From positions 1-64,000 of the IMG/VR virus record IMGVR_UViG_3300041411_000080: a stretch of 64,000 bases of DNA. One strand, 5' to 3'. Below are positions 41,817 to 63,452 of the stretch, piece after piece. The stretch's first letter is position 1, and each line of letters opens with the position of its first letter. Made by a program: the position numbers and the translations under genes. The notes beneath the pieces were generated by a model, which worked only from the letters and a program-made list of their open reading frames with translations, was not told the origin of the DNA and searched no databases.

Positions 41817-43902
41817 CAGGATGCACCACCAAGCTTAAGAATGTAATTTCATCAGGGGATGATTGTTCGATGACCTTTTCTTCGTTGTGGATAACCCAAG
41901 GGATACCCAGCTCTTTAGCGCTGGCTAGTTTATGAGCGGTGTACTTGGTACCACAAACGATCATCGACGTTTTGGATGTAACGTCTTTAGTAATCTTAGC
42001 TCCCAAACTTTTATAGTGAGCCTCGACTTCTTTACGTTTCTGACCAGAGAAGTTGCTACCAGTTACAACGATAGATGCATTACCTAAGACACCGTCACCT
42101 TGACGCTTAGCAGGTGCTCTCAACCATTGCATCTTAGGGAAGTTCCGCCAACTAGATTCTTCTTCTGGTTTAGCACGATCTTCATCGAAGTATTCAAAGA
42201 TACATGTAGCACCAAGCTTACCGATATCTTCGACTTCTAACAGATCATTGTAGGACGCAGTAGAAAGATCATGGATATGCTGGAAGTGTTGTGCCAGTTT
42301 CTCCGAAGAGTTCTTAGCAATACCGTCAATACCGAACGACATCACCAAACGTTCCAGTGTCATGTTGGCTTGAGCGATTACGATAGCCTCTAGAAGCTTC
42401 TCAGTCTCTCGCTCAGACAGTCCAACGCTCAACAGGTCCTCACGTGTCAGATCGAACACTTTAGCAGGCTGGTAAGCTTCTAGGATCTTAGCGTCATGTA
42501 GCTGCTTAATAGTAGCTGGACCCAGACCTTTGATGTTAAAGACATCGCGATCCATGCAGTACTCTAGATGAGCAATGCGTCGACCATAGCACTGACGGTT
42601 ATCACAGTTGTCAGTTTCTTTACCATCTTTGTTAACCACGATAGAGGTTGGGGTGTTACATACTGGACAATGAGTCAGTGGCTCGTAGAGGACCTGATCG
42701 GTGTGTTCTACGGTTGTACCCATTACGTAGGGGATCACATCACCTGCACGTTTGATTTGCACGCTACAGCCTTTATAGAGCTTTAGACGGTCAACCTCGT
42801 TACGGTTATGCAACGTTACGTTAGAGATCATCGTACCATGAACATGAACTGGTTCTACACGAGCCACTGGAGTCAGTCGGCCTGTACGACCTACCTGATA
42901 CTCGACGTTGAGTAGTGGTGTTACACCTTCAGATGCAGGGAACTTAAAAGCAGTAGCCCACTTAGGTGCACGGGAAGTCATGCCGAGGAATTTACGATGC
43001 GCATGCTTAACTACCTTGAAGACGATACCATCGACTTCGTAAGGTTGCTCAGAACGAATGGACTGCATCTTCTCGATGAACTTTGGCCACCCGGTGATGT
43101 AATGATCCGATGGGTAGTTTAGTACATCAGGAATAGCCGCTACTTCGAATCCGTTTGTAGTAAGAGACTCTTGTTCATAGTACCAATCGCGATCGATTGT
43201 GTCCCCTTCACTGTCAAACGAGTATCCCACAAACTGCAACTTACGCTCAGCTGTTACAGCTGGGTCTTTTTGACGCAAACTACCGGCGGCGTAGTTTCGT
43301 GGGTTAGCAAAGGTCTTCTTACCCTCGGCTGCTAACGCATCGTTAATAGCCCTGTAGTCCGCTAGAGCCACCACCACTTCACCTGTAACCAACGTATACT
43401 CATTGGTCCAGGTAGTCAGTGTTTTAGGGATACCCTTGATCTGCAAAGCATTAAGAGTTACGTTCTCACCTGTTTCACCATCGCCACGAGTTACAGCCCA
43501 AAGCAGTTTACCATTGCGGTAAACCAGTCTTAGGCTCAGACCGTCTAGCTTCCATTCACCTCTCACTTCAAGACCCGTAGTCTCTGGATCACCAGTGATG
43601 TCGATGCTCCAGTCAACCGCTTCATCAGAATCAAAGGTGTTAGCCAGACTCAACATTGGCAAACGGTGCTTCAACGGTTTGAAGTGACCAAACGTCATTG
43701 CATGTCCGACTTTCTGAGTTGGAGAAGCTGGAGTTACCAACTCTGGGAACTGCTTCTCTATATGAACCAGTGCACGGAACTTCTGGTCATACTCAGCGTC
43801 TGGGATCTTCGCATCATCCAAGACATGGTAATGATAGTTCAGCTCATCAATCTCAGCACAGGCAATAGCATAAGCTTCACGTAGTTCTTTCATGTTCGTC
43901 AT
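41791..43902 (-). CDS. ligA: NAD+-dependent DNA ligase
   Basis: Y...DAEYD, PMLSLAN, EWKLDG, TRGDG..GE, NPRNYAAGSLRQ, DGIVFK, PKWATAFKFP, VGRTG, Zn finger CPVC, BRCT. Confidence 0.95.
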   Translation of the reverse strand: MTNMKELREAYAIACAEIDELNYHYHVLDDAKIPDAEYDQKFRALVHIEKQFPELVTPASPTQKVGHAMTFGHFKPLKHRLPMLSLANTFDSDEAVDWSIDITGDPETTGLEVRGEWKLDGLSLRLVYRNGKLLWAVTRGDGETGENVTLNALQIKGIPKTLTTWTNEYTLVTGEVVVALADYRAINDALAAEGKKTFANPRNYAAGSLRQKDPAVTAERKLQFVGYSFDSEGDTIDRDWYYEQESLTTNGFEVAAIPDVLNYPSDHYITGWPKFIEKMQSIRSEQPYEVDGIVFKVVKHAHRKFLGMTSRAPKWATAFKFPASEGVTPLLNVEYQVGRTGRLTPVARVEPVHVHGTMISNVTLHNRNEVDRLKLYKGCSVQIKRAGDVIPYVMGTTVEHTDQVLYEPLTHCPVCNTPTSIVVNKDGKETDNCDNRQCYGRRIAHLEYCMDRDVFNIKGLGPATIKQLHDAKILEAYQPAKVFDLTREDLLSVGLSERETEKLLEAIVIAQANMTLERLVMSFGIDGIAKNSSEKLAQHFQHIHDLSTASYNDLLEVEDIGKLGATCIFEYFDEDRAKPEEESSWRNFPKMQWLRAPAKRQGDGVLGNASIVVTGSNFSGQKRKEVEAHYKSLGAKITKDVTSKTSMIVCGTKYTAHKLASAKELGIPWVIHNEEKVIEQSSPDEITFLSLVVHPDGNIKINF

Positions 43903-44899
43903 TGGATTTTCCTTTTAGTAGTTTGATGGCCCATTCAGGGTAGCGTGATGTATACCCCAACTCCAACCGGCGTTGAGTCTCCAGTACCCGGAAGGTAAGA
44001 CCATCTGTCGGGAACATGTAATCATTCAAGTTCTCTGATACAAAAGACTCGATGCATTCTTCAATAGCACCGACCTCACGAACCTTACCATTGAAGACGA
44101 ATGCTGGCATGTGATGGAATCCCCAACTGGACATTATAGCCCGTAGTTCCATCAGCTCGAAGGTACAACCTGGAATGTTGACGGTGTGCGGGATGAACGT
44201 CAGACAATCTGGTTTTATCCCTTGATCACGAAACATGTTCATCATGACCTGTGTAGCTGTCATCTCAGGACCCACATCTTTCCAATCAGTTAACTCCATG
44301 TGTTCCGCTGTTGAGATAACAACTTTCCCATGGATATTAACACGCTCAGTTTCATTGATGTGTTGTGGTACACCATCAACCATGTACATGTGCATAGTGA
44401 CGTCTTTACCTACCAGACCATCACCATAATTAACGGCCTTGTGTAAAGACCCACCCACGTAAACCAACTCAACCTCAATACCTCTAAGAGCTGGCTCACA
44501 CAGGATGTCTTTTGCATCCACCGACTCAAACCAACGTCTTAGACTAGAAACGTCATGAGCTTCTCTCAGAGGTAACATTGGGAAGTCGTGTTTGGTTAAC
44601 TCCCCACGCGATAACATCTGTTCACGAATATTACGTGCTTGTGGTATGGCCGTCGCTGCATGTGGGTTCTCACGACACATACGTTCGTAATCTCGCTTGT
44701 AAATATCGTACTGCACGTCTGAGATCAATGGTTCTTTAAAGACGTGGTACATCAAGTCGTAGTTAGTGAGGGTGGCTCTCAATTCGTGGAGCTTTTGTAT
44801 CGATTGCATCGCCGTATTGCTCGGCAGCTTTGGCCCACCAGTCTGGGGTATGTGCATAGTAGTATTCACCGAAGATGTGGGTTGCGAGGGCATTATCAA
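43877..44899 (-). CDS. LigA adenylation-domain paralogue lacking the catalytic Lys (pseudo-ligase)
   Basis: ISDVQYD, FPMLPL, EPALRG in place of KxDG, GDG.VG.DVT, TDGLTF, GYTSRYPEWAIK; no OB, Zn finger or BRCT. Confidence 0.75.
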   Translation of the reverse strand: MIMPSQPTSSVNTTMHIPQTGGPKLPSNTAMQSIQKLHELRATLTNYDLMYHVFKEPLISDVQYDIYKRDYERMCRENPHAATAIPQARNIREQMLSRGELTKHDFPMLPLREAHDVSSLRRWFESVDAKDILCEPALRGIEVELVYVGGSLHKAVNYGDGLVGKDVTMHMYMVDGVPQHINETERVNIHGKVVISTAEHMELTDWKDVGPEMTATQVMMNMFRDQGIKPDCLTFIPHTVNIPGCTFELMELRAIMSSWGFHHMPAFVFNGKVREVGAIEECIESFVSENLNDYMFPTDGLTFRVLETQRRLELGYTSRYPEWAIKLLKGKSNDEHERTT

Positions 44900-45450: not shown

Positions 45451-46038
45451 TTACGCGATAGCATCTTGGGTGCCAGACTGACCCTGATACTTACCGTCGC
45501 CGTAACCAGACTCACATGGTTCACCTTGCAAGAACAATACCTGAGCAATACCACAGTTCAAGTACACTCGTACTGGCAAGTTGCAGTTGTTCACTACTTC
45601 TACCACAAGGTTACCTTTCCAACCCGGCTCCAGTGGCGTGACGATTACCGAGACAGCACCACGAGCATAGGTCGACTTACCGAGGCAGTTACCCAGAACG
45701 TCCTTCGGCATATCAAACCATTCAGGTGTATGACCCAACAGGAAACCGTTAGGTGGCAGCGATACGTAAGCTGCACCGTCAGTGGCGTACTTGATCACTG
45801 GTTCAATATAGATCTTTGGATCAATGTTCCGTGGATCAACTTCGACACAGTGTACGTCAGTGAACAGCTTCAGACCTTTGTCTGAAAGACTGATGTCGTA
45901 ACCATAGCTGGACAGACCATACGAAGGAACGCGGCTGCCGTCTTCGGTGTAGCGAACCTTCGTTGGATGAAACGGTTTGATCATTGGTGTGTCGCTAGTA
46001 CACAGATCACGAATTTGCCAATCGGCGAGAATAGTCAT
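45451..46038 (-). CDS. dcd: dCTP deaminase
   Basis: SYGLSSYGYD, GKSTYARG, TPLEPGW.G, IAQVLF, Y..GKYQGQ. Confidence 0.9.
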   Translation of the reverse strand: MTILADWQIRDLCTSDTPMIKPFHPTKVRYTEDGSRVPSYGLSSYGYDISLSDKGLKLFTDVHCVEVDPRNIDPKIYIEPVIKYATDGAAYVSLPPNGFLLGHTPEWFDMPKDVLGNCLGKSTYARGAVSVIVTPLEPGWKGNLVVEVVNNCNLPVRVYLNCGIAQVLFLQGEPCESGYGDGKYQGQSGTQDAIA

Positions 46039-50477: not shown

Positions 50478-51128
50478 TCAGCAAAGATTTTCTAAACGTG
50501 GATCTGTTGGCTTCAGGATTTGACGCCAATCAATTTCTTCATAGGGGTAGTCTTCCTCGTAACGCTTGAGGAATTCCAATGCCCACTTAGTACCTGCTTC
50601 AGTGAACAGGTTCTTGCGAATAGGTACACCTGCTTCAATAGCCAGATGTAGGGCTGTAGCGGTGCCACCCGTAATCACTTCGCGTTTAGGGTCACCCTTG
50701 GTAGGGGCAGAATAGATAATCGCTCTCACATGCGATTTAAGGTCATGTCCAAAGATTTGGAACACGTTACGAGTATGTAGTGATTCCCCGTAATCATCCA
50801 GTCCCCTGAATGAACCTCTAGCTGACTGTGCCATAGCTCTAGCTAGATCCCAGTTCTCTGCGAAGTCTTGTGCGATCATAAAGAATGGATGTTGAGCAAC
50901 TCGTCTACGAGAAGCTTTAGACTCCACCAAATAAATTCTAGCCCCTACCTCGGAATACTTCCGGGATTGTTTAGCACCATACCAACCAGCGCGGTCAGCC
51001 CCGAAAGCATCGCCTGAACTAACAGCGATCCCTAGATCCGTATAGGTACGACCTATACGAATCAGTAGTTCAAGATCATCAAGACTCGCTTCACGCGAAC
51101 CTACTATTGCAACGTATTCTTGTTCCAT
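50478..51128 (-). CDS. SLOG/DprA-like nucleotide-binding protein
   Basis: VAIVGSR, SSGDAFGAD, GGTA.A. Confidence 0.7.
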   Translation of the reverse strand: MEQEYVAIVGSREASLDDLELLIRIGRTYTDLGIAVSSGDAFGADRAGWYGAKQSRKYSEVGARIYLVESKASRRRVAQHPFFMIAQDFAENWDLARAMAQSARGSFRGLDDYGESLHTRNVFQIFGHDLKSHVRAIIYSAPTKGDPKREVITGGTATALHLAIEAGVPIRKNLFTEAGTKWALEFLKRYEEDYPYEEIDWRQILKPTDPRLENLC

Positions 51129-53641: not shown

Positions 53642-54684
53642 TATAGATCACTCATCATTTTTAGGGTGAGCGTAGTACATCTCGTATGCCCTTCAAATTT
53701 TACATCTGTCCAACCTACTCGTTGCAGATCACGGATAAGTCGTTCTCGGTTAGCCTCTAAGAGACGAAAGTCAAACAACGTAAATACATAAGCTTGAGTA
53801 GCTGGGTTGAAATTATTCCCACCAACGTTGGTCAGCGCTTTCTGTATAGTGGCCAGGCATTTATCATAGTTCTCAACTAACTTCTCCCCCGTCTGCTTAC
53901 TTACCGTAATTGGACCCATAAGCTCTAGTTGAGTAGTATTGTAATGCCATTCATTGAATGCTTCATTCCCATTGGAGAGATAATACACCACGTTAATGTC
54001 ACGGTAGAGATTTTTGCGATCTAGGAATAAGTTCTCGACATCCTCGACCTTCGATGCGACATAGGGGAGAAACCTTTGCTTTACAGTAGCGGGTGAGTGG
54101 TCGACTTTGAAAGGGGTCATAATGAATACGACTGTAAATCGACCAACGTGTTTGTTCGGTTCGACTACGAACTGTTCATTCTCGCCATTGTCGTATTTAA
54201 TTCTAACTGTAATTGGGACCCGCCTTACTCGTGCAGCTAAAGCTACTGACTCACGTAGACCATCGTAATCGTTAGCAACGACAAGATTATAGAACCAGAT
54301 GTCTTGATTGGGCGAACCATTTAAACTTCGTCCATACCACGTGTCAACATCTGTCATCTTACGTGGTAGTGATTGCTGTACAACTGGTACTGGATCGATA
54401 TCGTAACCTGTGAAACGTTCTATCTCAGCAGAGTCCTTCGGAGAAGAGGTCTGTACCGGGACAGTTGTCGGGATATCTGATTTGTCCTCGCTTGAGGGCG
54501 ATTTTCTTCGCTTCAACCCGATTGTAGAAAGTGCCGTACTGATCCACGAAGCCTTGTTCATAATCTTCCCCTGCGTATTTACGAAGTAATTTGATGCCGC
54601 CATATGCCTCAATATGACCGTACATGAGATTTGAGTAGTGGCGAGGTCCCATGACAATAATGTCTTTATAACGGTTGGCTGCAC
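53641..54684 (-). CDS. hypothetical protein (start uncertain, 54561 or 54357)
   Basis: long ORF whose 5' part overlaps 54425..54931. Confidence 0.65.
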   Translation of the reverse strand: MQPTVIKTLLSWDLATTQISCTVILRHMAASNYFVNTQGKIMNKASWISTALSTIGLKRRKSPSSEDKSDIPTTVPVQTSSPKDSAEIERFTGYDIDPVPVVQQSLPRKMTDVDTWYGRSLNGSPNQDIWFYNLVVANDYDGLRESVALAARVRRVPITVRIKYDNGENEQFVVEPNKHVGRFTVVFIMTPFKVDHSPATVKQRFLPYVASKVEDVENLFLDRKNLYRDINVVYYLSNGNEAFNEWHYNTTQLELMGPITVSKQTGEKLVENYDKCLATIQKALTNVGGNNFNPATQAYVFTLFDFRLLEANRERLIRDLQRVGWTDVKFEGHTRCTTLTLKMMSDL

Positions 54685-54931
54685 TGACTATCACAAAGTC
54701 AACTTTATGTTTATCCCAGCGCCAGCCAGTAAAGCCATCAGCATCATTCTTAATCCACGCTCGATGCATATAGCCATCAAGCAACATCTTACCTATGCCT
54801 TCAAGGCGCTTTACTGGATACTGACCTGTAACAATCCACCACAAACGTTTAAGCTTTTGACCTTTCTGGCTATGAAATGGAGTAGGATATTCTGGAACGT
54901 TATAACCTGAATCACGAGTTGGCCAAACCAT
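54425..54931 (-). CDS. conserved phage protein
   Basis: G.RH...EQGFVDQ.G.F..R.EA..IA...GQ....LFSE. Confidence 0.75.
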   Translation of the reverse strand: MVWPTRDSGYNVPEYPTPFHSQKGQKLKRLWWIVTGQYPVKRLEGIGKMLLDGYMHRAWIKNDADGFTGWRWDKHKVDFVIVSAANRYKDIIVMGPRHYSNLMYGHIEAYGGIKLLRKYAGEDYEQGFVDQYGTFYNRVEAKKIALKRGQIRYPDNCPGTDLFSEGLC

Positions 54932-55472: not shown

Positions 55473-55501
55473 TTGAGTTGGCAAAAAGAAAAGGGAATAA
55501 A

Positions 55502-55521
55502 GCCAGTCCCGAAGGACTGGC
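55502..55521 (-). terminator. intrinsic terminator, cUUCGg loop
   Basis: GCCAGTCC-TTCG-GGACTGGC-TTTATT. Confidence 0.8.
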
Positions 55522-55530
55522 AATATGACG

Positions 55531-55905
55531 TCATGCAGCTACTTTACTCTTGGACACAGATACTTGTACCCATGGGAATTGACTATTACCAGTCACGCCT
55601 TCATTGGTGTAATCAGCTGCTTCAATATCGACCATGTAGGCAGGTGGCATATAACCAACACGTTGCTTGAATACGTGCACATCATAACCGGCTTCACGCA
55701 GTTGCTTAGTTACTTCAATCTCTACGGTATTGTCGTAGGTGATATAGCCCGGCACATAGAAGCTGAAAAGACCGCTACCACGATAAGCGTCAGAGACTAC
55801 AGCTGGATCGGCCATCAGGGCACTGAGCTTAGCTGCGAAGCCAGTAGGTGTTTCTGGAACAGGTTTAACGATAGCGATCAGACTATCGGGCGTTGGGATT
55901 GCCAT
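55531..55905 (-). CDS. hypothetical protein (124 aa), possible paralogue of 15672..16031
   Basis: MAIP start; LREAGYDVHV; GAGGT SD. Confidence 0.75.
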   Translation of the reverse strand: MAIPTPDSLIAIVKPVPETPTGFAAKLSALMADPAVVSDAYRGSGLFSFYVPGYITYDNTVEIEVTKQLREAGYDVHVFKQRVGYMPPAYMVDIEAADYTNEGVTGNSQFPWVQVSVSKSKVAA

Positions 55906-55945
55906 GGTGTTACCTCAGTTAGGAAGGAAGTTCATAGAATCATAC

Positions 55946-56233
55946 TCAATGGTTTTCATTTACACGATGTTTGTTACGCTCGTCGTTTTTGGCTGACCAC
56001 TTGCCCGCTAACGTAGAACGACATTCAGCACCGTCACCCTCACGGAAGAATTCAGAGTAGCCACCTTCACGACGATTTCGCATTAGCTTTACAGGTTCGT
56101 AATCTCGGATTGAGGGATTACTCTTTGATAGATCGAATCCATCCATGCCACCCAGTTCAATATGAACCATAGGTACTTCTGGAACCGTTCTGTGTTCATA
56201 TCGGAAACACTTACCTCCAAACTTCCTACTCAT
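55946..56233 (-). CDS. charged peptide, array A (95 aa)
   Basis: AGGAG SD; R/E/G-rich; no hydrophobic run. Confidence 0.75.
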   Translation of the reverse strand: MSRKFGGKCFRYEHRTVPEVPMVHIELGGMDGFDLSKSNPSIRDYEPVKLMRNRREGGYSEFFREGDGAECRSTLAGKWSAKNDERNKHRVNENH

Positions 56234-56472
56234 GTAGGTCTCCTACTACCATAGTCGTTTTCAGCAAAACTACTTAATCGTGGGTCATTCCAACAACTTG
56301 TACGCCACCCTTCGTGAATTGGTCTGGTATCGAGATCATAACCATTCCCCCGTCTATGTTTGGCATTGATCCCACCGTGGTACCGGTGGCGCATTGCTAT
56401 ATGAGGTTCTAATGAACGAAAAATTACCTTATTACGGTCTAGCTGCCAAGCCTCCCCTAAGTATTTAACCAT
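56230..56472 (-). CDS. charged peptide, array A (80 aa)
   Basis: coupled at both ends; R/H/G-rich. Confidence 0.7.
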   Translation of the reverse strand: MVKYLGEAWQLDRNKVIFRSLEPHIAMRHRYHGGINAKHRRGNGYDLDTRPIHEGWRTSCWNDPRLSSFAENDYGSRRPT

Positions 56473-56785
56473 TGTGTCTACTCTGGTCTGTATCAGTGTA
56501 GTGCGACCATACCGTAGTAGCTAGGTTATGTCGTTCAGCATCGGGTGTCCATTGTTCATCGAACGCTTTGTCTGACTCGTACAACTCACGGGTTGATGAA
56601 CAACACTGCATACTCAGTTCGTCTTCAGGGTTGCGCCGATCTCTATCGATAACCCATTTGATATTGGCTATAGGACCCAAGGGGTAGAAATAGGCATGTA
56701 TGTCTGTATCGCCGTCTATACCTCGACCCATCGCTGGATGGCACTTACCCTTATAGTACTTCTCACGTGCGATGTTATTCCGCAT
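56465..56785 (-). CDS. charged peptide, array A (106 aa)
   Basis: SD present; D/R-rich. Confidence 0.75.
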   Translation of the reverse strand: MRNNIAREKYYKGKCHPAMGRGIDGDTDIHAYFYPLGPIANIKWVIDRDRRNPEDELSMQCCSSTRELYESDKAFDEQWTPDAERHNLATTVWSHYTDTDQSRHNG

Positions 56786-56789
56786 AGTT

Positions 56790-57005
56790 TCACTCTCTTC
56801 CAGTAATACCGCTAGCGTTACGTAGTTCTATACCGACGACACGGGCCCATCTGAATTGATTGCTACGTAGGCATTTATTGAGTGGTTCACTAGAGCGTTC
56901 ATGGCGAATGTCTTCAGGTTCATTACGAATAATGAACCCGCCTCGATCGGAATCACGTCTATTACCTAGCGGTTTGGTTTCAACCTTCCGAGTCGATGGT
57001 TTCAA
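56790..57005 (-). CDS. charged peptide, array A (71 aa)
   Basis: overlaps the 3' end of the QueC-like gene; R-rich. Confidence 0.65.
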   Translation of the reverse strand: MKPSTRKVETKPLGNRRDSDRGGFIIRNEPEDIRHERSSEPLNKCLRSNQFRWARVVGIELRNASGITGRE

Positions 57006-57765
57006 GTTTGTACTCCGGCGGACATTTGTAATAGTCGTAACTCGGATAACGAATGTCTACATACGAGCACTTACCCACATGTTGCATGACACGTTGTTCT
57101 GCCCGATCTGTACAGTATGGACCTTTACGTTGTGCTCTAGCCACAGCTCGCCATACCGTTTCTTCGTGTTTCTGTTTGTATTGATAAAGTGTTAGGTTAG
57201 CCAACATACAGGGAGAGCACTTCTGACAGGCTTTACCCTCAGATGGCATTTCACATACCCACACCATCGGTAGCAGTCGCTTATCAATCTCCTCAAGCAC
57301 GTTGAGTTTGGTCATATGTAGCAATGGGAACTCTAGTGGGATTGGATCACCATGAAAGCCATGCTTCAACATGCTGTTCCACTGGTCTTCAACATGCTGG
57401 AGGTGTTTACCGAAGTATGCCCCATCACTGTCGACATAAGCCACGCGAACACAACTGTGACGTTTTGCATCCAGTACACGATACGCGCCTTGCATCCAAG
57501 AATTTGGTTGATTCCACTTTTTACTTTGACCATCATGGAGATAGACCGGTTGCAAGATCTCATACTGACGTTGAATCTTGTTGGGGTATTCACGGTTCAT
57601 GAACTCAATCAAACGATCCCGAGCTTCCAACTCAAGTTTCATTTTCTCTTGTGCTTGTCCGCCGTTTACGTACAGAATATCAATCGGACCATCTTCAGCC
57701 AACATATAAGAAACGAGGTAGGTAGAATCCATACCACCCGACAACAACACCAATGGAACTTTCAT
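56980..57765 (-). CDS. divergent QueC-like PP-loop ATPase
   Basis: LLSGGMDST, GQ...E, FPLL..TK, WVC...C..C..C Zn motif; lacks QueC VP.RN and YPDC. Confidence 0.8.
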   Translation of the reverse strand: MKVPLVLLSGGMDSTYLVSYMLAEDGPIDILYVNGGQAQEKMKLELEARDRLIEFMNREYPNKIQRQYEILQPVYLHDGQSKKWNQPNSWMQGAYRVLDAKRHSCVRVAYVDSDGAYFGKHLQHVEDQWNSMLKHGFHGDPIPLEFPLLHMTKLNVLEEIDKRLLPMVWVCEMPSEGKACQKCSPCMLANLTLYQYKQKHEETVWRAVARAQRKGPYCTDRAEQRVMQHVGKCSYVDIRYPSYDYYKCPPEYKLETIDSEG

Positions 57766-57791
57766 AGCTACTCCAAAAAGAAAATATGAAA

Positions 57792-57809
57792 GGGGAGCCG
57801 AAGCTCCCC
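57792..57809 (-). terminator. intrinsic terminator, cUUCGg loop
   Basis: GGGGAGC-TTCG-GCTCCCC-TTTCAT. Confidence 0.75.
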
Positions 57810-57815
57810 AGTCAA

Positions 57816-58949
57816 TTAAGCGGCGAAACCCATACCTGTTTTCTGATGACCTTCACCAACCTCGTGAGCATTGATAGCCTCAGCGAGAGTAATGTCAGTA
57901 CGACCTTCTTTGAACTCGAACGGATCGATCGACATCATGTCACGGATATCGTTAGCCTGTTCGTTGTTCAGGTTCTGGAACTTCAGTACACGGAAGCAAC
58001 GGCCCGGACGCAGCAGAGCATCATCGATATCACGGGTGGAGGTCAAGTTGGTGCAGATGATCAGCTTGATGTCACGTGCCACGATACCAGCGGTAGCGTT
58101 GAGCAGAGCCGACATCGAGACGTTACCTTCAGTACGCTTCTTAACCAGAATATCCGCGTCTTCGGTGAGTACGATGGAACCAGCTGGCAGTTCACGGATG
58201 AAGTCAGGGAAGCCTGGGTGACCCAGTACGTCCATACGGTCAGCCAGATAGATCTTATCATCCCAACCACGGGCGTTGATAACTTCCATCATCCAGTTCG
58301 ACTTACCAGTACCCGGTACACCGTAGATCAGTGCAACGTTGGAATTCGAAACCGAGAACTCTTTGAAGAACTCTGCTGGAGTGAAGTTGAAGTACGGGTA
58401 GAACTTGTTGACATCCAGTACATCACGGTTACCTTGAATGGTTTCCATAACAGTGCACAGGTTGCCTTGGCCGTCTACACGAATACGGGTCAGGTAACGA
58501 GTAGGGGTAGCGTTCAGGTGCTTGGTGAACTCTTCTTTGAACCACTGACAGAATACTGGCAGACCGAGTACGTCATAGGTCGACTTAGTAGCAGTAACCG
58601 ATGGGTTAACGAAGGCACCGATGATGTGGGTATCGGAAACGATTACACGACCCATTACGCAACGGATCATACGCAGACCAGCTTTAGCCAGAATGTCTTC
58701 AGACACTACGCGAGTAACGTCGTTAGCCGATTCTTCTTTGGTACCACCGTGAGGAATGTCGACCAACAGTTCATGCTGTTCCGAATGTTGACCTTGGGTG
58801 GAGAAGTACAGACGCACTACGTCGTAGATGTTATCACCACGCAGTAGTTCCAGTTTGGAGTTGAAGATCTCCATACGAGCTTTCAGTTCTGGAGTGATGC
58901 CGTTGAATTCAGCGAGGTTAGCGGCGTCTTGCATTTCGATAAAGTTCAT
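57816..58949 (-). CDS. AAA+ ATPase (BCS1-like) with N-terminal domain
   Basis: Walker A YGVPGTGKS, Walker B LTEDAD, sensor ICTN, SRH DDALLRPGR. Confidence 0.9.
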   Translation of the reverse strand: MNFIEMQDAANLAEFNGITPELKARMEIFNSKLELLRGDNIYDVVRLYFSTQGQHSEQHELLVDIPHGGTKEESANDVTRVVSEDILAKAGLRMIRCVMGRVIVSDTHIIGAFVNPSVTATKSTYDVLGLPVFCQWFKEEFTKHLNATPTRYLTRIRVDGQGNLCTVMETIQGNRDVLDVNKFYPYFNFTPAEFFKEFSVSNSNVALIYGVPGTGKSNWMMEVINARGWDDKIYLADRMDVLGHPGFPDFIRELPAGSIVLTEDADILVKKRTEGNVSMSALLNATAGIVARDIKLIICTNLTSTRDIDDALLRPGRCFRVLKFQNLNNEQANDIRDMMSIDPFEFKEGRTDITLAEAINAHEVGEGHQKTGMGFAA

Positions 58950-58974
58950 TGCGTTTTCCTTTGTTTAAATTGGA

Positions 58975-59205
58975 TTAGTAAGTCATTCTTTCAACGATGG
59001 CATCGTCGATATGTACAAGTTCACGGGTACGGGAATCTACACGGTTAGCTCGGGGCGCTCGCGGTACGTCTTCACCGGTACGTTTAGAGGGTCCGATATG
59101 CGGTTTATTGCGTACGTCTACGAGATCGATCGCACAACCCTGACCAGTTACTTCAGGTTTGATGTTGTGCTTTCTCGTCCATGCGTCTGGTTCAGCTCTT
59201 CGCAT
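58975..59205 (-). CDS. charged peptide, array B (76 aa)
   Basis: AGGTGA SD; R/D-rich. Confidence 0.75.
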   Translation of the reverse strand: MRRAEPDAWTRKHNIKPEVTGQGCAIDLVDVRNKPHIGPSKRTGEDVPRAPRANRVDSRTRELVHIDDAIVERMTY

Positions 59206-59212
59206 ATGTCAC

Positions 59213-59509
59213 CTAGAGTGATGTACGGAGAAAGGTGGATGCGTGATTGGACATGTCCTTAAATCGTCGGTTCAGATCTCGAGTAAACCCCGCTTGGTCA
59301 TTATGACGAACCTCAGGAACACCCTCCTCGCCCCAACTGTGGCGATCAGCTTCACGCCGAAAGTTGTAGTAGGATTCATCATGTTGCCGCCAGAAGAGGA
59401 TGTCAGAATCACACAACTGTTCAGGATGCATCGGGTCATCCTCCCGAGAGAAGCTGGCGTACTGGCGCTCTCTTTGGTTACGGCCTTCCGATTTTAAGAA
59501 TCGCACCAC
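59213..59509 (-). CDS. charged peptide, array B (about 98 aa)
   Basis: GAGGA SD; R/D/E-rich. Confidence 0.7.
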   Translation of the reverse strand: MVRFLKSEGRNQRERQYASFSREDDPMHPEQLCDSDILFWRQHDESYYNFRREADRHSWGEEGVPEVRHNDQAGFTRDLNRRFKDMSNHASTFLRTSL

Positions 59510-59748
59510 TCATCCTCCCGTTTCTCTATACGTCTATCTAGGGTCTGTTTATCGATATCGAGCCGTTCTTCATCGTCTTCTTCATTAATAGAACGATGAG
59601 CCCAACTTCGGTCAAGTGGTCCGCGAACAACGCCCGGACACCATTCCCACTCAGCCTCCGGTGTTGTGTTTCCGTAACGAACATAATCCAACGTTTCTTC
59701 GTCGTAGGAAAATGGATCGTTAGGGTCATGCATAACGTGTTCGCGCAT
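59494..59748 (-). CDS. charged peptide, array B (84 aa)
   Basis: AAGGTGA SD; D/E/R-rich; WCPGVVRGP. Confidence 0.75.
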   Translation of the reverse strand: MREHVMHDPNDPFSYDEETLDYVRYGNTTPEAEWEWCPGVVRGPLDRSWAHRSINEEDDEERLDIDKQTLDRRIEKREDEWCDS

Positions 59749-59756
59749 AGATCACC

Positions 59757-60026
59757 TTAACAAACTAGTTCTTCATGATCTTGATCAGGTCGGTACATGT
59801 CACCATCGTCACTTGGTGGTTCCACACGTTCTCGAAGTCGATCAGGAACATAGGTGCTGGTACGGTGAACCGGGGCTAGCTTACGCTCACCTATACGCTT
59901 GTCGTTCGTTTGGCTAAACGGAATAGTCGTATCTCGATCAGGACGAGTAACGACTTTACGGTTAACTAGGGATGGTTCACCTTTACGCATTACTTCAGGT
60001 CCTGACTCAAGATCACGATGAACCAT
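59757..60026 (-). CDS. charged peptide, array B (about 89 aa)
   Basis: ORF tiles; R/D/P-rich. Confidence 0.7.
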   Translation of the reverse strand: MVHRDLESGPEVMRKGEPSLVNRKVVTRPDRDTTIPFSQTNDKRIGERKLAPVHRTSTYVPDRLRERVEPPSDDGDMYRPDQDHEELVC

Positions 60027-60577
60027 TTGGAGAAACCATTACCGCGATTAACGATACGCAGGTTCTTCCACAAGTCGGGCCGGATGGCCGACTCACGCAA
60101 CTTAACGATTTCGTCTTGTTCCATCCAGCCTGGGAAACTGAACTTAGCCGACCGCGCTACTGCACGATCGTCATGAGGGTCAGTACTAACACCAGCTTGC
60201 ATCTGTCCTGCACCAGTGATGTTATCCACTGGAGTAAAAGCCTCATTGAAGTTATGATCGGACAGCACAGTGATAATACTAAGTGCTGAAGTCGGTTCAC
60301 CTACCTCATAGAAGTCAGGAGGGGGCAGCGATGGCAACTCAGGTTCTTTTGGGGCTACTACGTGATCCACCAATGGAATCACTGAGTACGTGTCAGCTTC
60401 CGCGCCATAGATCGTTCGATCAATGAGGTGCCGGGTCATGTGTTCACGCGCTTCAGTAAAAGACGTAAAGGTTTTACCCTTATCCGACGTAGCCGCCAGA
60501 GTACCGTCTTCTTTAAGGAACGAAATCCGTGCTCCGCAAACGGTCATGATTGCGAAGCGTTGATCTAATGGATGCAT
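59990..60577 (-). CDS. hypothetical protein (195 aa)
   Basis: GAGGT SD. Confidence 0.8.
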   Translation of the reverse strand: MHPLDQRFAIMTVCGARISFLKEDGTLAATSDKGKTFTSFTEAREHMTRHLIDRTIYGAEADTYSVIPLVDHVVAPKEPELPSLPPPDFYEVGEPTSALSIITVLSDHNFNEAFTPVDNITGAGQMQAGVSTDPHDDRAVARSAKFSFPGWMEQDEIVKLRESAIRPDLWKNLRIVNRGNGFSKWFIVILSQDLK

Positions 60578-60586
60578 ATCTACCTC

Positions 60587-61489
60587 TTAGGAATCGAAAC
60601 CAAATACCATCCGCACTTCACCATACTTCTCGTGAAGACGTTTTACTTCATCGGTGAAGTAAGCGAACTCTTTATTGATTGCAGCATTATCCAGAGTCCA
60701 CTGACAACGAATGTTCAGTTTCTCTACGCGCCCGGCATAACGTCTAAGTTTAGCCAGATGCTTAAGCGCCGATTTCTTACGTTTAACTACACGTTGGCGA
60801 ACGATCTTCTCGACTTTAGGTACATGACGGAAGTTTCCTGGACGATCGAGGATACTCCACGAATCATGTTGGTAGTCTGGATGATCAGGGACCATTTTCT
60901 TAACGTGACGTCGAACCCAGCGGATTTTCTTCTGTGCTTCGTCAACTTCATTCAGAATATGCATGGCATAAGACTGACTACGGATTTTCTCCGGTGTCAA
61001 CTGCGATTGGTCAATAGTAATCTGTTTACCACCCCAGATACCACCACACCAACTTTCAGGTTGAGAGACTTTATCCCACTTGACGTACTGATCCATGGTG
61101 AGAACGCCACGTTTATGGACTGGATTGAAATGCTTGGTACCTTCCAGAATCTCAGTACTGGTCAACCAGCTAAAAGAATGATCGCCGAAACTACCACCGC
61201 ATTTATAATACTCTTCCCAGTCAGGGGCCTTCCAGTCCCAACGAGATTTTGGCTCTTCACGTTTCACAAGGTCCTCAGGTAATCCCCGTGGCTCAGCCAA
61301 AGGTTTGATTGAATCCCCAGTATCAGTACCGCCGAAGCCATAACCGTTACGAACGTTGGCCAACCAACCGAACAAGAAGTAGTGGCGGTTACCTTCGTAT
61401 TTATGATCCGTGATATATTCCCAACTGTCTTCAGCTGGGGTAGACCCCAGTACTTTACGTTGGAACGCTGGATGAACATCAGTACCCAT
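60587..61489 (-). CDS. conserved phage protein (MGxDxH...R.Y.LF..LA.VRN family) with an insertion
   Basis: MGTDVH, RHYFLFGWLANVRN, RGLPED, HSFSWL, RMVFGFDS. Confidence 0.75.
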   Translation of the reverse strand: MGTDVHPAFQRKVLGSTPAEDSWEYITDHKYEGNRHYFLFGWLANVRNGYGFGGTDTGDSIKPLAEPRGLPEDLVKREEPKSRWDWKAPDWEEYYKCGGSFGDHSFSWLTSTEILEGTKHFNPVHKRGVLTMDQYVKWDKVSQPESWCGGIWGGKQITIDQSQLTPEKIRSQSYAMHILNEVDEAQKKIRWVRRHVKKMVPDHPDYQHDSWSILDRPGNFRHVPKVEKIVRQRVVKRKKSALKHLAKLRRYAGRVEKLNIRCQWTLDNAAINKEFAYFTDEVKRLHEKYGEVRMVFGFDS

Positions 61490-62360: not shown

Positions 62361-62582
62361 CTATTGCTCATCAACTGGACCACGCTTGAATTCCATGTTA
62401 GTCCAGCTGTCATCTTCATCCATTTCAGCTCGACCGTCAACCCAATGACAGTTACGCTGTTCTTCACCTGCACCTAAAGGTCTCCGGGCTTCGGCCTTAC
62501 GAATGGTTGTGATATTGTGTTCGGATAACCTTGGGAACACCCCTCTAGCAAATAGGGTTGGTATGCAGTCACGTTTAAACAT
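62361..62582 (-). CDS. charged peptide, array C (73 aa)
   Basis: AAGGT SD; ends WTNMEFKRGP... Confidence 0.75.
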   Translation of the reverse strand: MFKRDCIPTLFARGVFPRLSEHNITTIRKAEARRPLGAGEEQRNCHWVDGRAEMDEDDSWTNMEFKRGPVDEQ

Positions 62583-62585
62583 TGA

Positions 62586-62795
62586 TCAGACCTTATATAA
62601 CCCACGTTTTATATCTGTGTCCCATATGTACCGATCTATATCCTTCCGGTAGTCATCTGCTCCACAGGTCTCATCATCAAATAACCGCCTACCTTCTAGA
62701 GGTCGGTATTCCGTCACACATCGTTCAAAGATTACATGACGTCTTTGGTCAGAGCTACGGTCATTTAAACCAACCCCCTGATAGTCTCTACTCAT
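62586..62795 (-). CDS. charged peptide, array C (69 aa)
   Basis: GGTGA SD; ends WDTDIKRGL... Confidence 0.75.
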   Translation of the reverse strand: MSRDYQGVGLNDRSSDQRRHVIFERCVTEYRPLEGRRLFDDETCGADDYRKDIDRYIWDTDIKRGLYKV

Positions 62796-62796
62796 A

Positions 62797-63039
62797 TCAC
62801 CACCACTTGTTGTCTATCAAACCCCGTTGAACATCTGTAGCCCAATCTAATTTATTTTGATCTGTACGGACACCGCTAAGATCGTCGCCATCTAACTCAG
62901 TGGTCATCTTTAACCCTTCCGGTTGGATACGTGGATGATCACTCTTACCGCGCTCACCGAACATGCGATAATCCGTTTTCTTATCCTTGATATCCACAGG
63001 TGATGTCGCGCCTGCGGTTTTATCTGAAGTTCTGCCCAT
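62797..63039 (-). CDS. charged peptide, array C (80 aa)
   Basis: ends WATDVQRGL... Confidence 0.75.
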   Translation of the reverse strand: MGRTSDKTAGATSPVDIKDKKTDYRMFGERGKSDHPRIQPEGLKMTTELDGDDLSGVRTDQNKLDWATDVQRGLIDNKWW

Positions 63040-63050
63040 GGGTCGATTAC

Positions 63051-63245
63051 TCAGTAAGTTAAATGTGATGGTCGTTCACAATCAAGTTTTGGATTAGATA
63101 TATCGAAGACAACTGGGCGCCAACTGACATGTTCGGGATTGGAGCGATTACCACTGTCTCTTAAGGATGCTCGTCCACCGACGGTTACATGTCGTCCCGG
63201 CATTAGTCTGGTGTCGAGATAGGTATCTTCTTGCTCTCTACTCAT
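63051..63245 (-). CDS. charged peptide, array C (64 aa)
   Basis: start overlaps the upstream stop; R/D/S-rich. Confidence 0.7.
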   Translation of the reverse strand: MSREQEDTYLDTRLMPGRHVTVGGRASLRDSGNRSNPEHVSWRPVVFDISNPKLDCERPSHLTY

Positions 63246-63421
63246 CGGAAGCGTCTCTCATTAACGTTAGGTTCATCATTGGTTCTAGAAACGTTTGTAT
63301 CTAGATGTACAAACTCACGGTAACCTTCACCCTTACGTTTGAGTCGCTCCGAGGACAATCCTTGTAGGCGATGAATAACCACATTACCGCGTCCATATTC
63401 TGAATTATAATCTAGTTTCAT
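63242..63421 (-). CDS. charged peptide, array C (59 aa, start MKLDY)
   Basis: GAGG SD before ATG 63421. Confidence 0.7.
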   Translation of the reverse strand: MKLDYNSEYGRGNVVIHRLQGLSSERLKRKGEGYREFVHLDTNVSRTNDEPNVNERRFR

Positions 63422-63452
63422 TGTAAACCTCATTTGTTAGTGGCGGCATAAA

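What the first reader, a model, noticed from the sequence alone, without database searches (positions are those of the whole stretch)
56980..57765. Orphan QueC-like enzyme with a remodelled substrate pocket
Seen: PP-loop and Zn site are intact, but VPxRN and YPDC are replaced (WNQPN; DSDGAYF), and no folE, queD, queE or dpdA lies in these 64 kb. Known: QueC homologues in QatABCD and type IV CBASS conjugate to a protein N-terminal Gly. Nearby products begin with Gly after Met (60587 MGTD, 62797 MGRT). Inference: not a preQ0 synthase; possibly a protein or peptide ligase, or an anti-Qat/CBASS mimic.
Basis: partly seen in the sequence, partly recalled or inferred. Interest (0 to 1): 0.65.

Follow-up and report, generated by a model that had tools for sequence, protein, structure and literature searches.

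The report
Orphan viral QueC-fold enzyme, not QueC
A 320-kb phiKZ-like jumbo phage carries a well-conserved enzyme with the fold of the queuosine-pathway enzyme QueC. It has lost the residues that recognise QueC's substrate and has no pathway partners, so it belongs to a large, virus-specific, uncharacterised branch whose substrate is unknown.

Summary
ORF 56980-57765 (-) encodes a 261-aa QueC-fold PP-loop ATPase with an intact SGGxDS loop and an intact Cx8CxxCxxC zinc site. The complete 320,858-bp phage genome lacks FolE, QueD, QueE and TGT/DpdA, as do ten other complete phage genomes that carry this family.

The protein belongs to a large, mostly viral clade: 1,572 50%-identity clusters in the profile search. 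The clade has its own conserved signature (Q37, K41, E45, Q86, W90, H103, Y110, D114, K153, W-x-CE-x-P) and is under purifying selection. It usually sits in replication or nucleotide-metabolism modules of large phages.

It is therefore very unlikely to be a preQ0 synthase. It most likely adenylates a different carboxylate or carbonyl substrate, which remains unidentified.

The protein-ligase and anti-Qat/CBASS ideas have no support here. The neighbouring Met-Gly proteins belong to core chimallivirus families that also occur in phages without this gene. Hutinet et al. (2019) already flagged such singleton phage QueC-like genes as a probable separate subfamily, so this is a new variant of a known kind, of moderate interest.

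The parts
56980..57765 (-). QueC-fold PP-loop ATP pyrophosphatase gene, 261 aa. It belongs to a virus-specific orphan clade.
   Evidence: ORF. Pfam PF06508 38.9 bits against a cut-off of 22. phrog_1550 at 1.9e-25. AF2 model pLDDT 85.6. Structural matches: Cap9 Z 16.8, QueC Z 15.7-15.9, QatC Z 14.2.
57724..57741 (-). PP-loop S9-G-G-M-D-S14 (SGGxDS), the pyrophosphate-binding motif.
   Evidence: Sequence. G11, D13 and S14 are invariant and S9 and G10 are 95-97% conserved in 148 family representatives.
57631..57669 (-). V33-N-G-G-Q37-x3-K41-x3-E45: the family-specific replacement of the canonical YxQxHxxE motif.
   Evidence: hhalign against E. coli QueC gives Y35->G35, Q37 kept, H39 and E42 gapped. 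In the family, Q37 is 88%, K41 96% and E45 100% conserved.
57496..57516 (-). W84-N-Q-P-N-S-W90: the replacement of VPxRN(xxF). Q86 lies opposite the essential Arg and W90 opposite the Phe.
   Evidence: HMM alignment to 2pg3. Q86 and W90 are each 98% conserved in the family.
57412..57432 (-). D112-S-D-G-A-Y-F118: the shortened loop that replaces the xxDxSGYPDC base-recognition loop.
   Evidence: D114 aligns to the conserved Asp, and F118-G-K-H aligns to YPDC. Only D114 is conserved family-wide, at 97%.
57208..57255 (-). Zinc motif C171-E-x7-C180-xx-C183-xx-C186. Glu replaces the essential Tyr189 of QueC, as in Cap9's 'CE'.
   Evidence: All four Cys are invariant and E172 is 99% conserved. It aligns with the QueC and Cap9 zinc motifs.
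56980..57153 (-). Variable C-terminal tail (residues 205-261), partly low-confidence. It is absent from canonical QueC.
   Evidence: pLDDT drops after about residue 210 and is below 50 from residue 254. Conservation is poor. Tails differ between lineages.
57792..57809 (-). Terminator-like GC hairpin between the upstream AAA gene and the QueC-like gene, followed by a GGAG ribosome-binding site at 57771-57774.
57816..58949 (-). Upstream neighbour: AAA+ ATPase, homologous to phiKZ gp208. It is loosely linked (within 3 kb in 7 loci) but is also present in phages that lack the QueC-like gene.
   Evidence: Pfam AAA and phrog_14322. Synteny.

Best explanation
The gene encodes an active, zinc-capped PP-loop ATP pyrophosphatase of the QueC fold. 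It belongs to a large, almost exclusively viral clade that has diverged from preQ0 synthase.

It most likely still performs the chemistry of the superfamily. It binds ATP at the SGGxDS loop, with the adenine held by the Q86...W90 pair that replaces R...F. It then adenylates a carboxylate or carbonyl of a first substrate, releasing PPi, and passes the activated group to a nitrogen nucleophile.

The first substrate is not 7-carboxy-7-deazaguanine. The Tyr/Asp/Arg residues that hold that base are gone, and a different, strongly conserved set lines the pocket (Q37, K41, E45, H103, Y110, E172).

The gene is an accessory insertion in the early/middle 'replication and nucleotide-metabolism' block of a phiKZ/201phi2-1-like jumbo phage. 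The same family sits in such modules in unrelated large phages. I therefore infer a nucleotide-, nucleobase- or cofactor-type substrate drawn from the host pool, rather than a phage-made precursor.

Shown here: the fold, the motifs, the clade, the orphan status and purifying selection. Inferred: retained ATP-PPase activity, the adenine-binding role of Q86/W90, and the class of substrate.
For: Fold. AF2 model with pLDDT 85.6. Best structural matches are Cap9 (Z 16.8), QueC (Z 15.7-15.9), QatC (Z 14.2) and YcfA (Z 13.9).

Sequence family. Pfam QueC hit above cut-off, but only 24 bits against the 150-bit cut-off of the QueC equivalog TIGR00364.

Motifs. PP-loop and four zinc Cys are invariant. 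YxQxHxxE, VPxRN, YPDC and Y189 are replaced, judged against the experimentally defined QueC signature (PMC13329287) and the Cap9/QueC base contacts (10.1101/2025.04.06.647259; PMC13279940).

Clade.
- The profile search finds 1,572 representatives at E<=1e-3 and 88 at E<=1e-30.
- 148 of them share a private signature.
- The nearest ESM Atlas clusters by sequence features are 67-100% Viruses.
- In IMG/VR, 44 family members score >=104 bits, while 5 canonical-type QueCs (PxRN and CY, four also with YxDC) score 42-64 bits.

Selection. dN/dS is about 0.04 against a 78%-identical relative, with dS saturated.

Orphan status. No TGT, FolE, QueD or QueE in the complete genome. No QueD or TGT in ten more complete genomes that carry the family.

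Context.
- The region is syntenic with phiKZ gp206-208 and 201phi2-1 gp311-321, which lack the gene.
- In about 25 loci the gene lies between an SNF2 helicase and a family-B DNA polymerase, followed two genes on by a NUDIX hydrolase.
- dCTP deaminase is nearby in 6 loci.
Against: - No substrate is identified, so the statement is generic.
- Lack of the Tyr/Asp pair does not by itself exclude a 7-deazapurine. QatC also lacks it and its substrate is still unknown (PMC13279940, PMC13376578).
- The residue correspondences rest on profile alignments at about 20% identity and differ by one or two positions between methods. I could not superpose coordinates.
- Location in replication modules may reflect only where accessory genes accumulate in large phages.
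- The host could supply CDG, so orphan status alone does not exclude deazaguanine chemistry.
Confidence: 0.6

Rival explanations
1. It is a protein-modifying ligase that works like Cap9 or QatC. It activates a small carboxylate with ATP and conjugates it to the N-terminal amine of a phage or host protein.
For: - The closest solved structure is Cap9 (Z 16.8, rmsd 2.8 A over 175 residues), although this is within about 1 Z unit of QueC.
- The Cys-Glu at the first zinc ligand is shared with Cap9's CE(x)6C motif and not with QueC's Cys-Tyr (PMC13329287).
- The YPDC loop is shortened, which could open the pocket (inference).
- In 17 IMG/VR loci of one lineage, a 120-aa protein with a conserved N-terminus M-(G/A)-x-x-Y-x-W-x-x-N-P-F is encoded immediately upstream and is often translationally coupled.
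Against: - That 120-aa family has no homologue in this genome and is missing from several loci of its own lineage.
- No partner is conserved across lineages.
- Met-Gly starts are not enriched: 13 of 441 ORFs.
- The protein lacks partner-binding extensions like those of QatC.
Confidence: 0.15
2. It modifies nucleic acid directly, either tRNA or replicating DNA, in the way other PP-loop enzymes (TilS, ThiI, TtcA/TtuA) adenylate a base before amination or thiolation.
For: - Fold neighbours include ThiI (Z 12.7), TilS (Z 11.7) and NcsA/TtuA.
- The gene lies beside polymerase and helicase genes in about 25 loci.
- The window carries RNA ligase and RtcB RNA-repair genes.
- The genome encodes tRNA-Tyr(GUA), tRNA-Asn(GUU) and tRNA-Trp. 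PA1C, Vi01 and FLC9, which all have the gene, also carry Asn(GUU) and Tyr(GUA).
Against: - There is no THUMP, PUA or other RNA-binding domain, and the C-terminal tail is short and not conserved.
- The family median pI is 6.6.
- RSF1 and pEa_SNUABM_54 have the gene but no tRNA genes.
- No Fe-S cysteine triad for thiolation is present; the four Cys fit the structural zinc site.
Confidence: 0.12
3. It is a counter-defence enzyme aimed at QueC-family immunity (QatABCD or type IV CBASS). For example, it might consume their small-molecule substrate or mis-modify the N-terminal Gly of QatB or the CD-NTase.
For: It is a phage-borne homologue of a defence enzyme. It is accessory and sporadic among chimalliviruses: present in the PA1C group, RSF1/RSL2 and Noxifer, absent in phiKZ and 201phi2-1. 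This is the distribution expected of anti-defence genes (inference only).
Against: - There is no direct evidence.
- It scores only against PADLOC's generic QueC model and not against QatC.
- It lacks the QatC extensions that bind QatB (PMC13279940).
- It lacks the CDG-binding residues that would be needed to deplete CDG.
- The family is very broad and lies in replication modules, which fits a metabolic role better.
Confidence: 0.06
4. It is a genuine, merely divergent preQ0 synthase that uses host-made CDG, for instance to raise queuosine supply for the phage's GUN-anticodon tRNAs.
For: It scores above the Pfam QueC cut-off and is annotated as 7-cyano-7-deazaguanine synthase in PA1C and JGI records. 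The phage encodes tRNA-Tyr(GUA) and tRNA-Asn(GUU).
Against: - The residues equivalent to Y35, R99 and Y189 are substituted, and the Asp of YPDC is lost. Alanine substitution of Y35, R99, Y131 or Y189 abolishes activity in E. coli QueC (PMC13329287).
- It scores 24 bits against the 150-bit cut-off of TIGR00364.
- It forms a separate clade from the canonical-type viral QueCs.
- The likely hosts already have QueC (general knowledge).
Confidence: 0.05

Closest known systems
Canonical QueC (7-cyano-7-deazaguanine synthase; PF06508 Cluster 1 of Libby et al. 2026; PDB 3BL5, 2PG3)
   Same: Same Rossmann-type PP-loop fold (Z 15.7-15.9). It shares the SGGxDS loop, the Cx8CxxCxxC zinc site, a conserved Lys equivalent to K165 (K153), similar core length, and the conserved Gln of YxQ.
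   Different: - It lacks Y35, H39 and E42 of YxQxHxxE.
- R-N of VPxRN becomes Q-P.
- The YPDC loop is shortened and its Asp is lost.
- Y189 becomes Glu.
- It has a 55-residue C-terminal tail.
- It is never linked to queD, queE, folE or dpdA.
- Its distribution is viral.
Cap9 of type IV CBASS (PDB 9NTO)
   Same: It is the best structural match (Z 16.8, 175 of 181 residues). Both have Cys-Glu at the first zinc ligand and a compact core.
   Different: Cap9 keeps the RN and YxDC base-binding residues and uses CDG; this protein does not keep those residues. There is no CD-NTase, Cap10 (TGT) or Cap11 in the genome. No partner with an N-terminal Gly was identified.
QatC of QatABCD (PDB 9Y01, 9VLK)
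   Same: It is a QueC fold with the PP-loop and zinc site kept but the Tyr/Asp base-recognition pair replaced. In both cases the first substrate is unknown and is not CDG (PMC13279940, PMC13376578).
   Different: [quoted passage not shown] It has its own motifs (TxT, Cx19CGxCxxRR) and sits in an operon with qatA, qatB and qatD. None of these features is present here.
Singleton phage 'QueC-like' proteins (phrog_1550; Vi01_023, ECML-4 YP_009101458, PA1C QBX32403)
   Same: This is the family the window protein belongs to: phrog_1550 at 1.9e-25, 45% identity to the PA1C protein and 25% to Vi01. Hutinet et al. 2019 (PMC6884629) already suggested that such singletons are another subfamily of N-type ATP pyrophosphatases.
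   Different: Nothing essential differs. This is a new, divergent member from an uncultured 320-kb phage.
YcfA of Erwinia amylovora (PDB 9KQ6-9KQD; solved with ATP and with GTP)
   Same: A small stand-alone PP-loop enzyme of similar size that binds a purine nucleotide as substrate (Z 13.4-13.9). It is a model for the 'nucleotide substrate' reading.
   Different: Sequence identity is 10-11%. The YcfA match ends before the model's zinc motif (model residues 1-184), so no shared zinc site is evident. There is no detectable sequence relationship beyond the PP-loop (E 0.41).

Membership tests
PF06508 QueC superfamily (fold level) | Pfam score above the gathering cut-off, and a QueC-type fold | tested here: met
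   38.9 bits against a cut-off of 22. Z 15.7-16.8 to QueC and Cap9.
PF06508 QueC superfamily (fold level) | SGGxDS PP-loop and C(x)8CxxCxxC zinc motif | tested here: met
   S9-S14 and C171/C180/C183/C186 are present and invariant in the family.
Canonical QueC / preQ0 synthase (TIGR00364 equivalog; Cluster 1) | Score at or above the curated equivalog cut-off | tested here: not met
   24 bits against a cut-off of 150.3.
Canonical QueC / preQ0 synthase | YxQxHxxE motif (Y35 essential) | tested here: not met
   G35 lies opposite Y35. H39 and E42 fall in gaps. Only Q37 is kept.
Canonical QueC / preQ0 synthase | VPxRN motif (R99 essential) | tested here: not met
   Q86-P87 lie opposite R-N in the HMM alignment, and N88-S89 in the hhalign alignment. 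No Arg is present under either alignment.
Canonical QueC / preQ0 synthase | YPDC motif (Tyr stacks on the 7-deazaguanine, Asp reads its edge) | tested here: not met
   F118-G-K-H121 lie opposite YPDC. The loop is 1-2 residues shorter and is not conserved in the family.
Canonical QueC / preQ0 synthase | Tyr after the first zinc Cys (Y189 essential) | tested here: not met
   E172 is there instead, 99% conserved in the family.
Canonical QueC / preQ0 synthase | Co-occurrence with queD, queE, folE or a TGT/DpdA | tested here: not met
   None of these occurs in the complete genome. QueD and TGT are also absent from ten other complete genomes carrying the family.
Canonical QueC / preQ0 synthase | Converts CDG to preQ0; complements a queC deletion | not testable with these tools
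   Needs a complementation or enzyme assay.
Cap9 (type IV CBASS) | RN and H(x)4YxDC base-binding motifs retained | tested here: not met
Cap9 (type IV CBASS) | Encoded next to a CD-NTase (SMODS) and a TGT-like Cap10 | tested here: not met
   No PF18144 and no PF01702 in the genome.
Cap9 (type IV CBASS) | CE at the first zinc ligand | tested here: met
   C171-E172.
QatC (QatABCD) | N- and C-terminal extensions (about 400 aa or more) and QatC-specific motifs; match to a QatC model | tested here: not met
   The protein is 261 aa. PADLOC matches only the generic QueC model. QatC in the PDB aligns only at the PP-loop and zinc region.
QatC (QatABCD) | Operon with a KAP NTPase (QatA), QatB with an MGTS N-terminus, and TatD (QatD) | tested here: not met
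   No PF07693 or PF01026 in the genome. The MGTD neighbour is a phiKZ gp206 homologue, not demonstrably QatB-like.
Viral orphan QueC-like clade (phrog_1550 and relatives) | Match to the family profile, and the private signature Q37/K41/E45/Q86/W90/H103/Y110/D114/K153/W169-x-CE-x-P | tested here: met
   phrog_1550 at 1.9e-25. All signature residues are present in P0001.

The most novel reading that the evidence does not exclude
Phages have recruited the QueC fold for their own protein-conjugation chemistry. On this reading the clade attaches an ATP-activated small molecule to the N-terminal amine of a target protein. The target could be a phage partner, such as the M(G/A)xxYxWxxNPF protein coupled to it in one lineage, or a host immunity protein such as QatB or a CD-NTase. 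That would make it a viral counterpart or antagonist of Cap9 and QatC.
Probability: 0.12. Interest if true: 0.85.

Novelty: new variant of a known kind. Interest (0 to 1): 0.5.

Why it matters
The QueC fold has recently been shown to be re-used for protein deazaguanylation in bacterial immunity (Cap9), and for a still unknown reaction in QatC. The published map of the family (PMC13329287) does not treat the viral singletons.

The clade has its own invariant pocket, is under purifying selection, has consistently no deazaguanine pathway, and is typically embedded in replication modules of jumbo and other large phages.

Finding its substrate would define a new viral enzyme activity. It might also give a handle on QatC's unknown first substrate, since both have lost the same base-reading residues. 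Practically, the annotations '7-cyano-7-deazaguanine synthase' and 'QueC-like queuosine biosynthesis' on these phage genes should not be read as evidence of queuosine or deazaguanine metabolism.

Tried and rejected
- Near-identity DNA search of the phage collection with window 55500-60500 found no match. The phage is known only from metagenomes.
- Single-sequence phmmer against the PDB found nothing meaningful. Profiles were needed.
- Fused domains. The 320-450-aa family members have C-terminal extensions with no Pfam hit and no similarity to neighbouring genes or to ORFs of this genome, so there is no Rosetta-stone clue.
- Partner search by neighbourhood clustering over 54 loci found no gene that travels with the family across lineages. 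AAA ATPase, Arn.3/T4_Y16D-like, DprA-like and dCTP deaminase genes recur, but all also exist in phages without the gene.
- Complex prediction on the L056 QueC-like protein with its upstream 120-aa protein returned 'no answer' (ipSAE 0.00). That is evidence neither for nor against binding.
- Link to phage tRNA genes. Two of five complete QueC-like-bearing phages have no tRNA genes, so I rejected an obligate link.
- The radical-SAM-like ORF as a QueE candidate: rejected. It is below the Pfam cut-off and matches phrog_27142, an Fe-S redox family.
- pI as a hint of nucleic-acid binding was uninformative.
- Not used: sequencing-run and read tools, because no expression claim is made.
Full report
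**1. What is in the sequence**

The window is the first 64 kb of a complete 320,858-bp viral record with direct terminal repeats. About 105 of 125 non-overlapping ORFs in the window run on the minus strand.

ORF 56980-57765 (-) encodes 261 residues starting MKVPLVLLSGGMDST. The start is well defined:
- A GGAG lies 6 nt upstream of the ATG.
- A GC-rich hairpin followed by a T-tract (57809-57792) separates the gene from the upstream AAA ATPase gene, which ends at 57816.
- All 21 metagenomic relatives at 50-86% identity begin at the same methionine.

- the PP-loop S9-GGMD-S14;
- the zinc motif C171-x8-C180-xx-C183-xx-C186;
- W84-NQP-N88;
- D112-SDGAY-F118.

**2. It has a QueC fold but is not a QueC**

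Family scans place it in the QueC superfamily but outside the enzyme family proper:
- Pfam PF06508 is matched above its cut-off, in two pieces (38.9 bits).
- PHROG 1550, 'QueC-like', is matched at 1.9e-25.
- The NCBIfam equivalog for QueC gives 24 bits against a cut-off of 150.3.
- PADLOC reports only its generic QueC model, not QatC.

An AlphaFold2 model built on the 22-sequence alignment is confident (pLDDT 85.6, pTM 0.83). Re-alignment of the Foldseek hits gave these matches:

| Structure | Z | Notes |
|---|---|---|
| Cap9 (9NTO) | 16.8 | rmsd 2.8 A over 175 residues |
| B. subtilis QueC (3BL5) | 15.9 | |
| Pectobacterium QueC (2PG3) | 15.7 | |
| QatC core | 14.2 | |
| YcfA | 13.4-13.9 | |
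| ThiI | 12.7 | |

The first three are tied within the tool's stated uncertainty.

Libby et al. 2026 (PMC13329287) define the canonical signature as SGGxDS, YxQxHxxE, VPxRN, YPDC and C(x)8CxxCxxC. They show that Y35A, R99A, Y131A and Y189A each abolish queuosine formation in E. coli.

In the Cap9-CdnD structure the conjugated 7-deazaguanine is held by the Tyr and Asp of YxDC and by the Arg of RN (bioRxiv 10.1101/2025.04.06.647259). The same Tyr/Asp pair is present in B. subtilis QueC (PMC13279940).

I aligned the family profile with E. coli QueC (hhalign, 97% probability, E 6.7e-11) and with 2PG3. The results for each motif:
- **YxQxHxxE:** G35 lies opposite Y35, Q37 is kept, and H39 and E42 fall in gaps.
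- **VPxRN:** Q86-P87 (HMM alignment) or N88-S89 (hhalign) lie opposite R-N. There is no Arg either way.
- **YPDC:** F118-G-K-H121 lie opposite it, in a loop that is shorter and not conserved.
- **Y189:** E172 lies opposite it.

Of the five signature motifs, three are replaced, and the zinc motif has lost its essential Tyr.

**3. It belongs to a large viral clade with its own signature**

A profile of the 22 close relatives was searched against 1.84 billion cluster representatives. It found 1,572 proteins at E<=1e-3, 580 at E<=1e-10 and 88 at E<=1e-30.

In an alignment of 148 of the best hits (25-57% identical to the query), these positions are conserved in 88-100% of sequences:
- P4, L5, S9, G10, G11, D13, S14;
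- Y32, Q37, K41, E45;
- Q86, W90, H103, Y110, D114, W129, P147, K153;
- W169, C171, E172, P174, C180, C183, C186.

130 of the 148 match Pfam QueC, and none carries an informative second domain.

The spacing of Q86 and W90 (i, i+4) matches R and F in VPxRNxxF of QueC, and R233 and F237 of QatC, which hold the adenine of ATP (PMC13279940). I infer that Q86 and W90 retain that role.

The nearest ESM Atlas clusters by sequence features are 67-100% viral (Uroviricota).

In IMG/VR, a pattern scan recovered 53 loci:
- 44 proteins score 104-280 bits against the family HMM and lack YxDC.
- 5 score 42-64 bits and have PxRN and Cys-Tyr (four also YxDC); these are canonical-type viral QueCs.

Two of those five fragmentary contigs carry QueD.

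In GenBank phages, the family occurs in:
- PA1C-like Pseudomonas jumbo phages (45% identity);
- Erwinia pEa_SNUABM_54 (38%);
- Burkholderia FLC9 (35%);
- Ralstonia RSF1/RSL2-like phages (25-31%);
- Pseudomonas phage Noxifer (26%);
- about 100 Vi01-like Ackermannviridae (25%).

Against a 78%-identical relative, dN is 0.17 while dS is saturated. That gives dN/dS of about 0.04, so the gene is under purifying selection and is not a decaying QueC.

**4. It is an orphan, here and everywhere I looked**

The whole genome has no match to TGT/DpdA, GTP cyclohydrolase I or PTPS/QueD at E<=1.

The single radical-SAM-like ORF (genome 315362-316267) scores 19.8 bits, below the Pfam cut-off. It belongs to phrog_27142, 'Fe-S-cluster redox domain', so it is not QueE.

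Ten further complete or nearly complete genomes that carry the family have neither QueD nor TGT. They are PA1C, Vi01, RSF1, pEa_SNUABM_54, FLC9 and five IMG/VR genomes of 310-363 kb.

The genome also has no SMODS/CD-NTase, KAP NTPase or TatD. The gene is therefore not part of a type IV CBASS-like or Qat-like cassette.

Hutinet et al. [quoted passage not shown] The present gene is a member of that overlooked group.

**5. Genomic context**

The region is syntenic with PA1C, with phiKZ gp206-gp208 and with 201phi2-1 gp311-gp321. The correspondences are:

| Window ORF | Identity |
|---|---|
| 60587-61489 | gp206 family |
| 57816-58949 | gp208 AAA ATPase |
| 55531-55905 | gp244-like |
| 54425-54931 | Arn.3 / T4_Y16D-like |
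| 50478-51128 | gp207 DprA-like |
| 45451-46038 | dCTP deaminase |

phiKZ and 201phi2-1 have these neighbours but no QueC-like gene. The gene is therefore an accessory insertion into a conserved chimallivirus block.

Close relatives at 78% and 55% identity keep the order AAA, QueC-like, gp244-like, Y16D-like.

Other lineages show different contexts:
- In about 25 IMG/VR loci of one lineage, the gene lies between an SNF2 helicase and a 1,230-aa family-B DNA polymerase, followed two genes on by a NUDIX hydrolase.
- In six loci a dCTP deaminase is nearby.
- In Vi01 a dCMP deaminase lies 2.4 kb downstream.

The recurring theme is the replication and nucleotide-metabolism module of large phages. 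No single gene travels with the family.

**6.

The literature premise is partly right.
- Cap9 does conjugate 7-amido-7-deazaguanine to the N-terminal Gly of its CD-NTase.
- For QatC the reaction is unresolved. The QatB MGTS N-terminus is essential and enters the active site, but CDG gave no activity and was not seen bound (PMC13279940, PMC13376578).

The evidence offered from the window does not hold.
- Met-Gly starts are found in 13 of 441 ORFs genome-wide and 4 of 125 in the window.
- The 300-aa MGTD protein is a gp206 homologue. Its N-terminus (MGTDVHP here, MGCDIHP in 201phi2-1, MGDYVY in phiKZ) is equally conserved in phages that lack the QueC-like gene.

One lead in favour of a protein substrate did emerge elsewhere. 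In 17 loci of the helicase/polymerase lineage, a 120-aa protein is encoded immediately upstream, often overlapping the QueC-like start. Its N-terminus is conserved as M-(G/A)-x-x-Y-x-W-x-x-N-P-F.

That lead is weak for this window:
- The protein has no homologue in this genome.
- It is absent from several loci of its own lineage.
- The one complex prediction gave no verdict.

**7. Most likely mechanism**

What is shown:
- an intact ATP-pyrophosphatase scaffold with a structural zinc site;
- a remodelled but strongly conserved pocket;
- viral distribution;
- purifying selection;
- no deazaguanine pathway.

What is inferred:
- The enzyme still adenylates a carboxylate or carbonyl and transfers it to a nitrogen nucleophile.
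- The first substrate is not CDG.
- From context, the substrate is a nucleotide, nucleobase or cofactor-type metabolite available in the host.

I put 0.6 on this general statement. The rival explanations, listed separately with their tests, are:

| Rival explanation | Confidence |
|---|---|
| Cap9/QatC-like protein ligase | 0.15 |
| Direct nucleic-acid modifier | 0.12 |
| Counter-defence enzyme against Qat or CBASS IV | 0.06 |
| True preQ0 synthase using host CDG | 0.05 |

**8. Novelty and verdict**

The gene family is already catalogued (phrog_1550). Its oddity was noted in one sentence in 2019, and its function is unknown.

New here:
- the explicit signature;
- the size and viral nature of the clade;
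- its consistent orphan status in eleven complete genomes;
- its module context;
- the refutation of the Met-Gly-neighbour argument.

I rate it a new variant of a known kind, with interest 0.5. It is a good candidate for enzymology, but the sequence alone does not reveal a new mechanism.

Noticed in passing
genome (outside the window) C1:309979-310524: The phage encodes three tRNAs: Tyr(GTA), Asn(GTT) and Trp(CCA). Two of them belong to the queuosine-modified GUN set. PA1C, Vi01 and FLC9, which all carry the QueC-like gene, also encode Asn(GTT) and Tyr(GTA). RSF1 and pEa_SNUABM_54 carry the gene but no tRNA. The pattern may only reflect which tRNAs phages usually carry.
   Followed up: partly
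IMG/VR loci, e.g. L056:312-671, L033:659-1018, L032:893-1255: A 120-aa protein family with the conserved N-terminus M-(G/A)-x-x-Y-x-W-x-x-N-P-F is encoded immediately upstream of the QueC-like gene in 17 loci, often overlapping its start. It lies between an SNF2 helicase and a family-B DNA polymerase. It has no homologue in the window genome. The complex prediction gave no verdict.
   Followed up: partly
window 60587-61489 (-): The phiKZ gp206-family protein has a conserved extreme N-terminus: MGTDVHP here, MGCDIHP in 201phi2-1 gp311, MGDYVY in phiKZ gp206. The D-x-H could be a metal-binding motif. Partial homologues occur in Aeromonas, Acinetobacter and actinophage genomes.
   Followed up: partly
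window 55946-56785, 58975-60026, 62361-63433 (-): Runs of small (63-106 aa), very hydrophilic, Arg/Asp/Glu/Trp-rich ORFs with overlapping stops and starts lie around the AAA and QueC-like genes. The seven scanned have no PHROG match, and the three of those scanned against Pfam have no Pfam match. Some C-termini look alike, for example ...DTDIKRGLYKV and ...ATDVQRGLIDNKWW, which suggests paralogy.
   Followed up: no
window 57792-57809 and 55502-55521 (-): Two strong terminator-like hairpins (GGGGAGC-TTCG-GCTCCCC and GCCAGTCC-TTCG-GGACTGGC, each followed by T-rich sequence) bracket the QueC-like gene plus four or five small ORFs. This suggests one transcription unit separate from the AAA gene.
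   Followed up: no
window 27123-28565, 35522-36766 (-): An RNA ligase (phrog_968) and an RtcB tRNA-splicing ligase (phrog_1075) are present, indicating an RNA-repair capability.
   Followed up: no
window 41791-43902 and 43877-44899 (-): A full-length NAD-dependent DNA ligase is immediately preceded by a second 340-aa ORF that matches only the N-terminal half of the same ligase family. This may be a duplicated or split adenylation domain.
   Followed up: no
window 28831-30276 (-): The thymidylate synthase ORF is 481 aa, but the match spans only 276 profile positions. That implies an insertion of about 200 residues, possibly an intein, a homing element or an extra domain.
   Followed up: no
window 54425-54931 (-): An Arn.3 / T4_Y16D-like protein (phrog_839) lies within 1-3 kb of the QueC-like gene here, in PA1C, in Vi01 and in close relatives. 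It is also present in 201phi2-1, which lacks the QueC-like gene.
   Followed up: partly
genome C1:315362-316267 (+): A 301-aa Fe-S / radical-SAM-like protein (phrog_27142, 8.9e-160) of unknown role. It is not QueE.
   Followed up: partly
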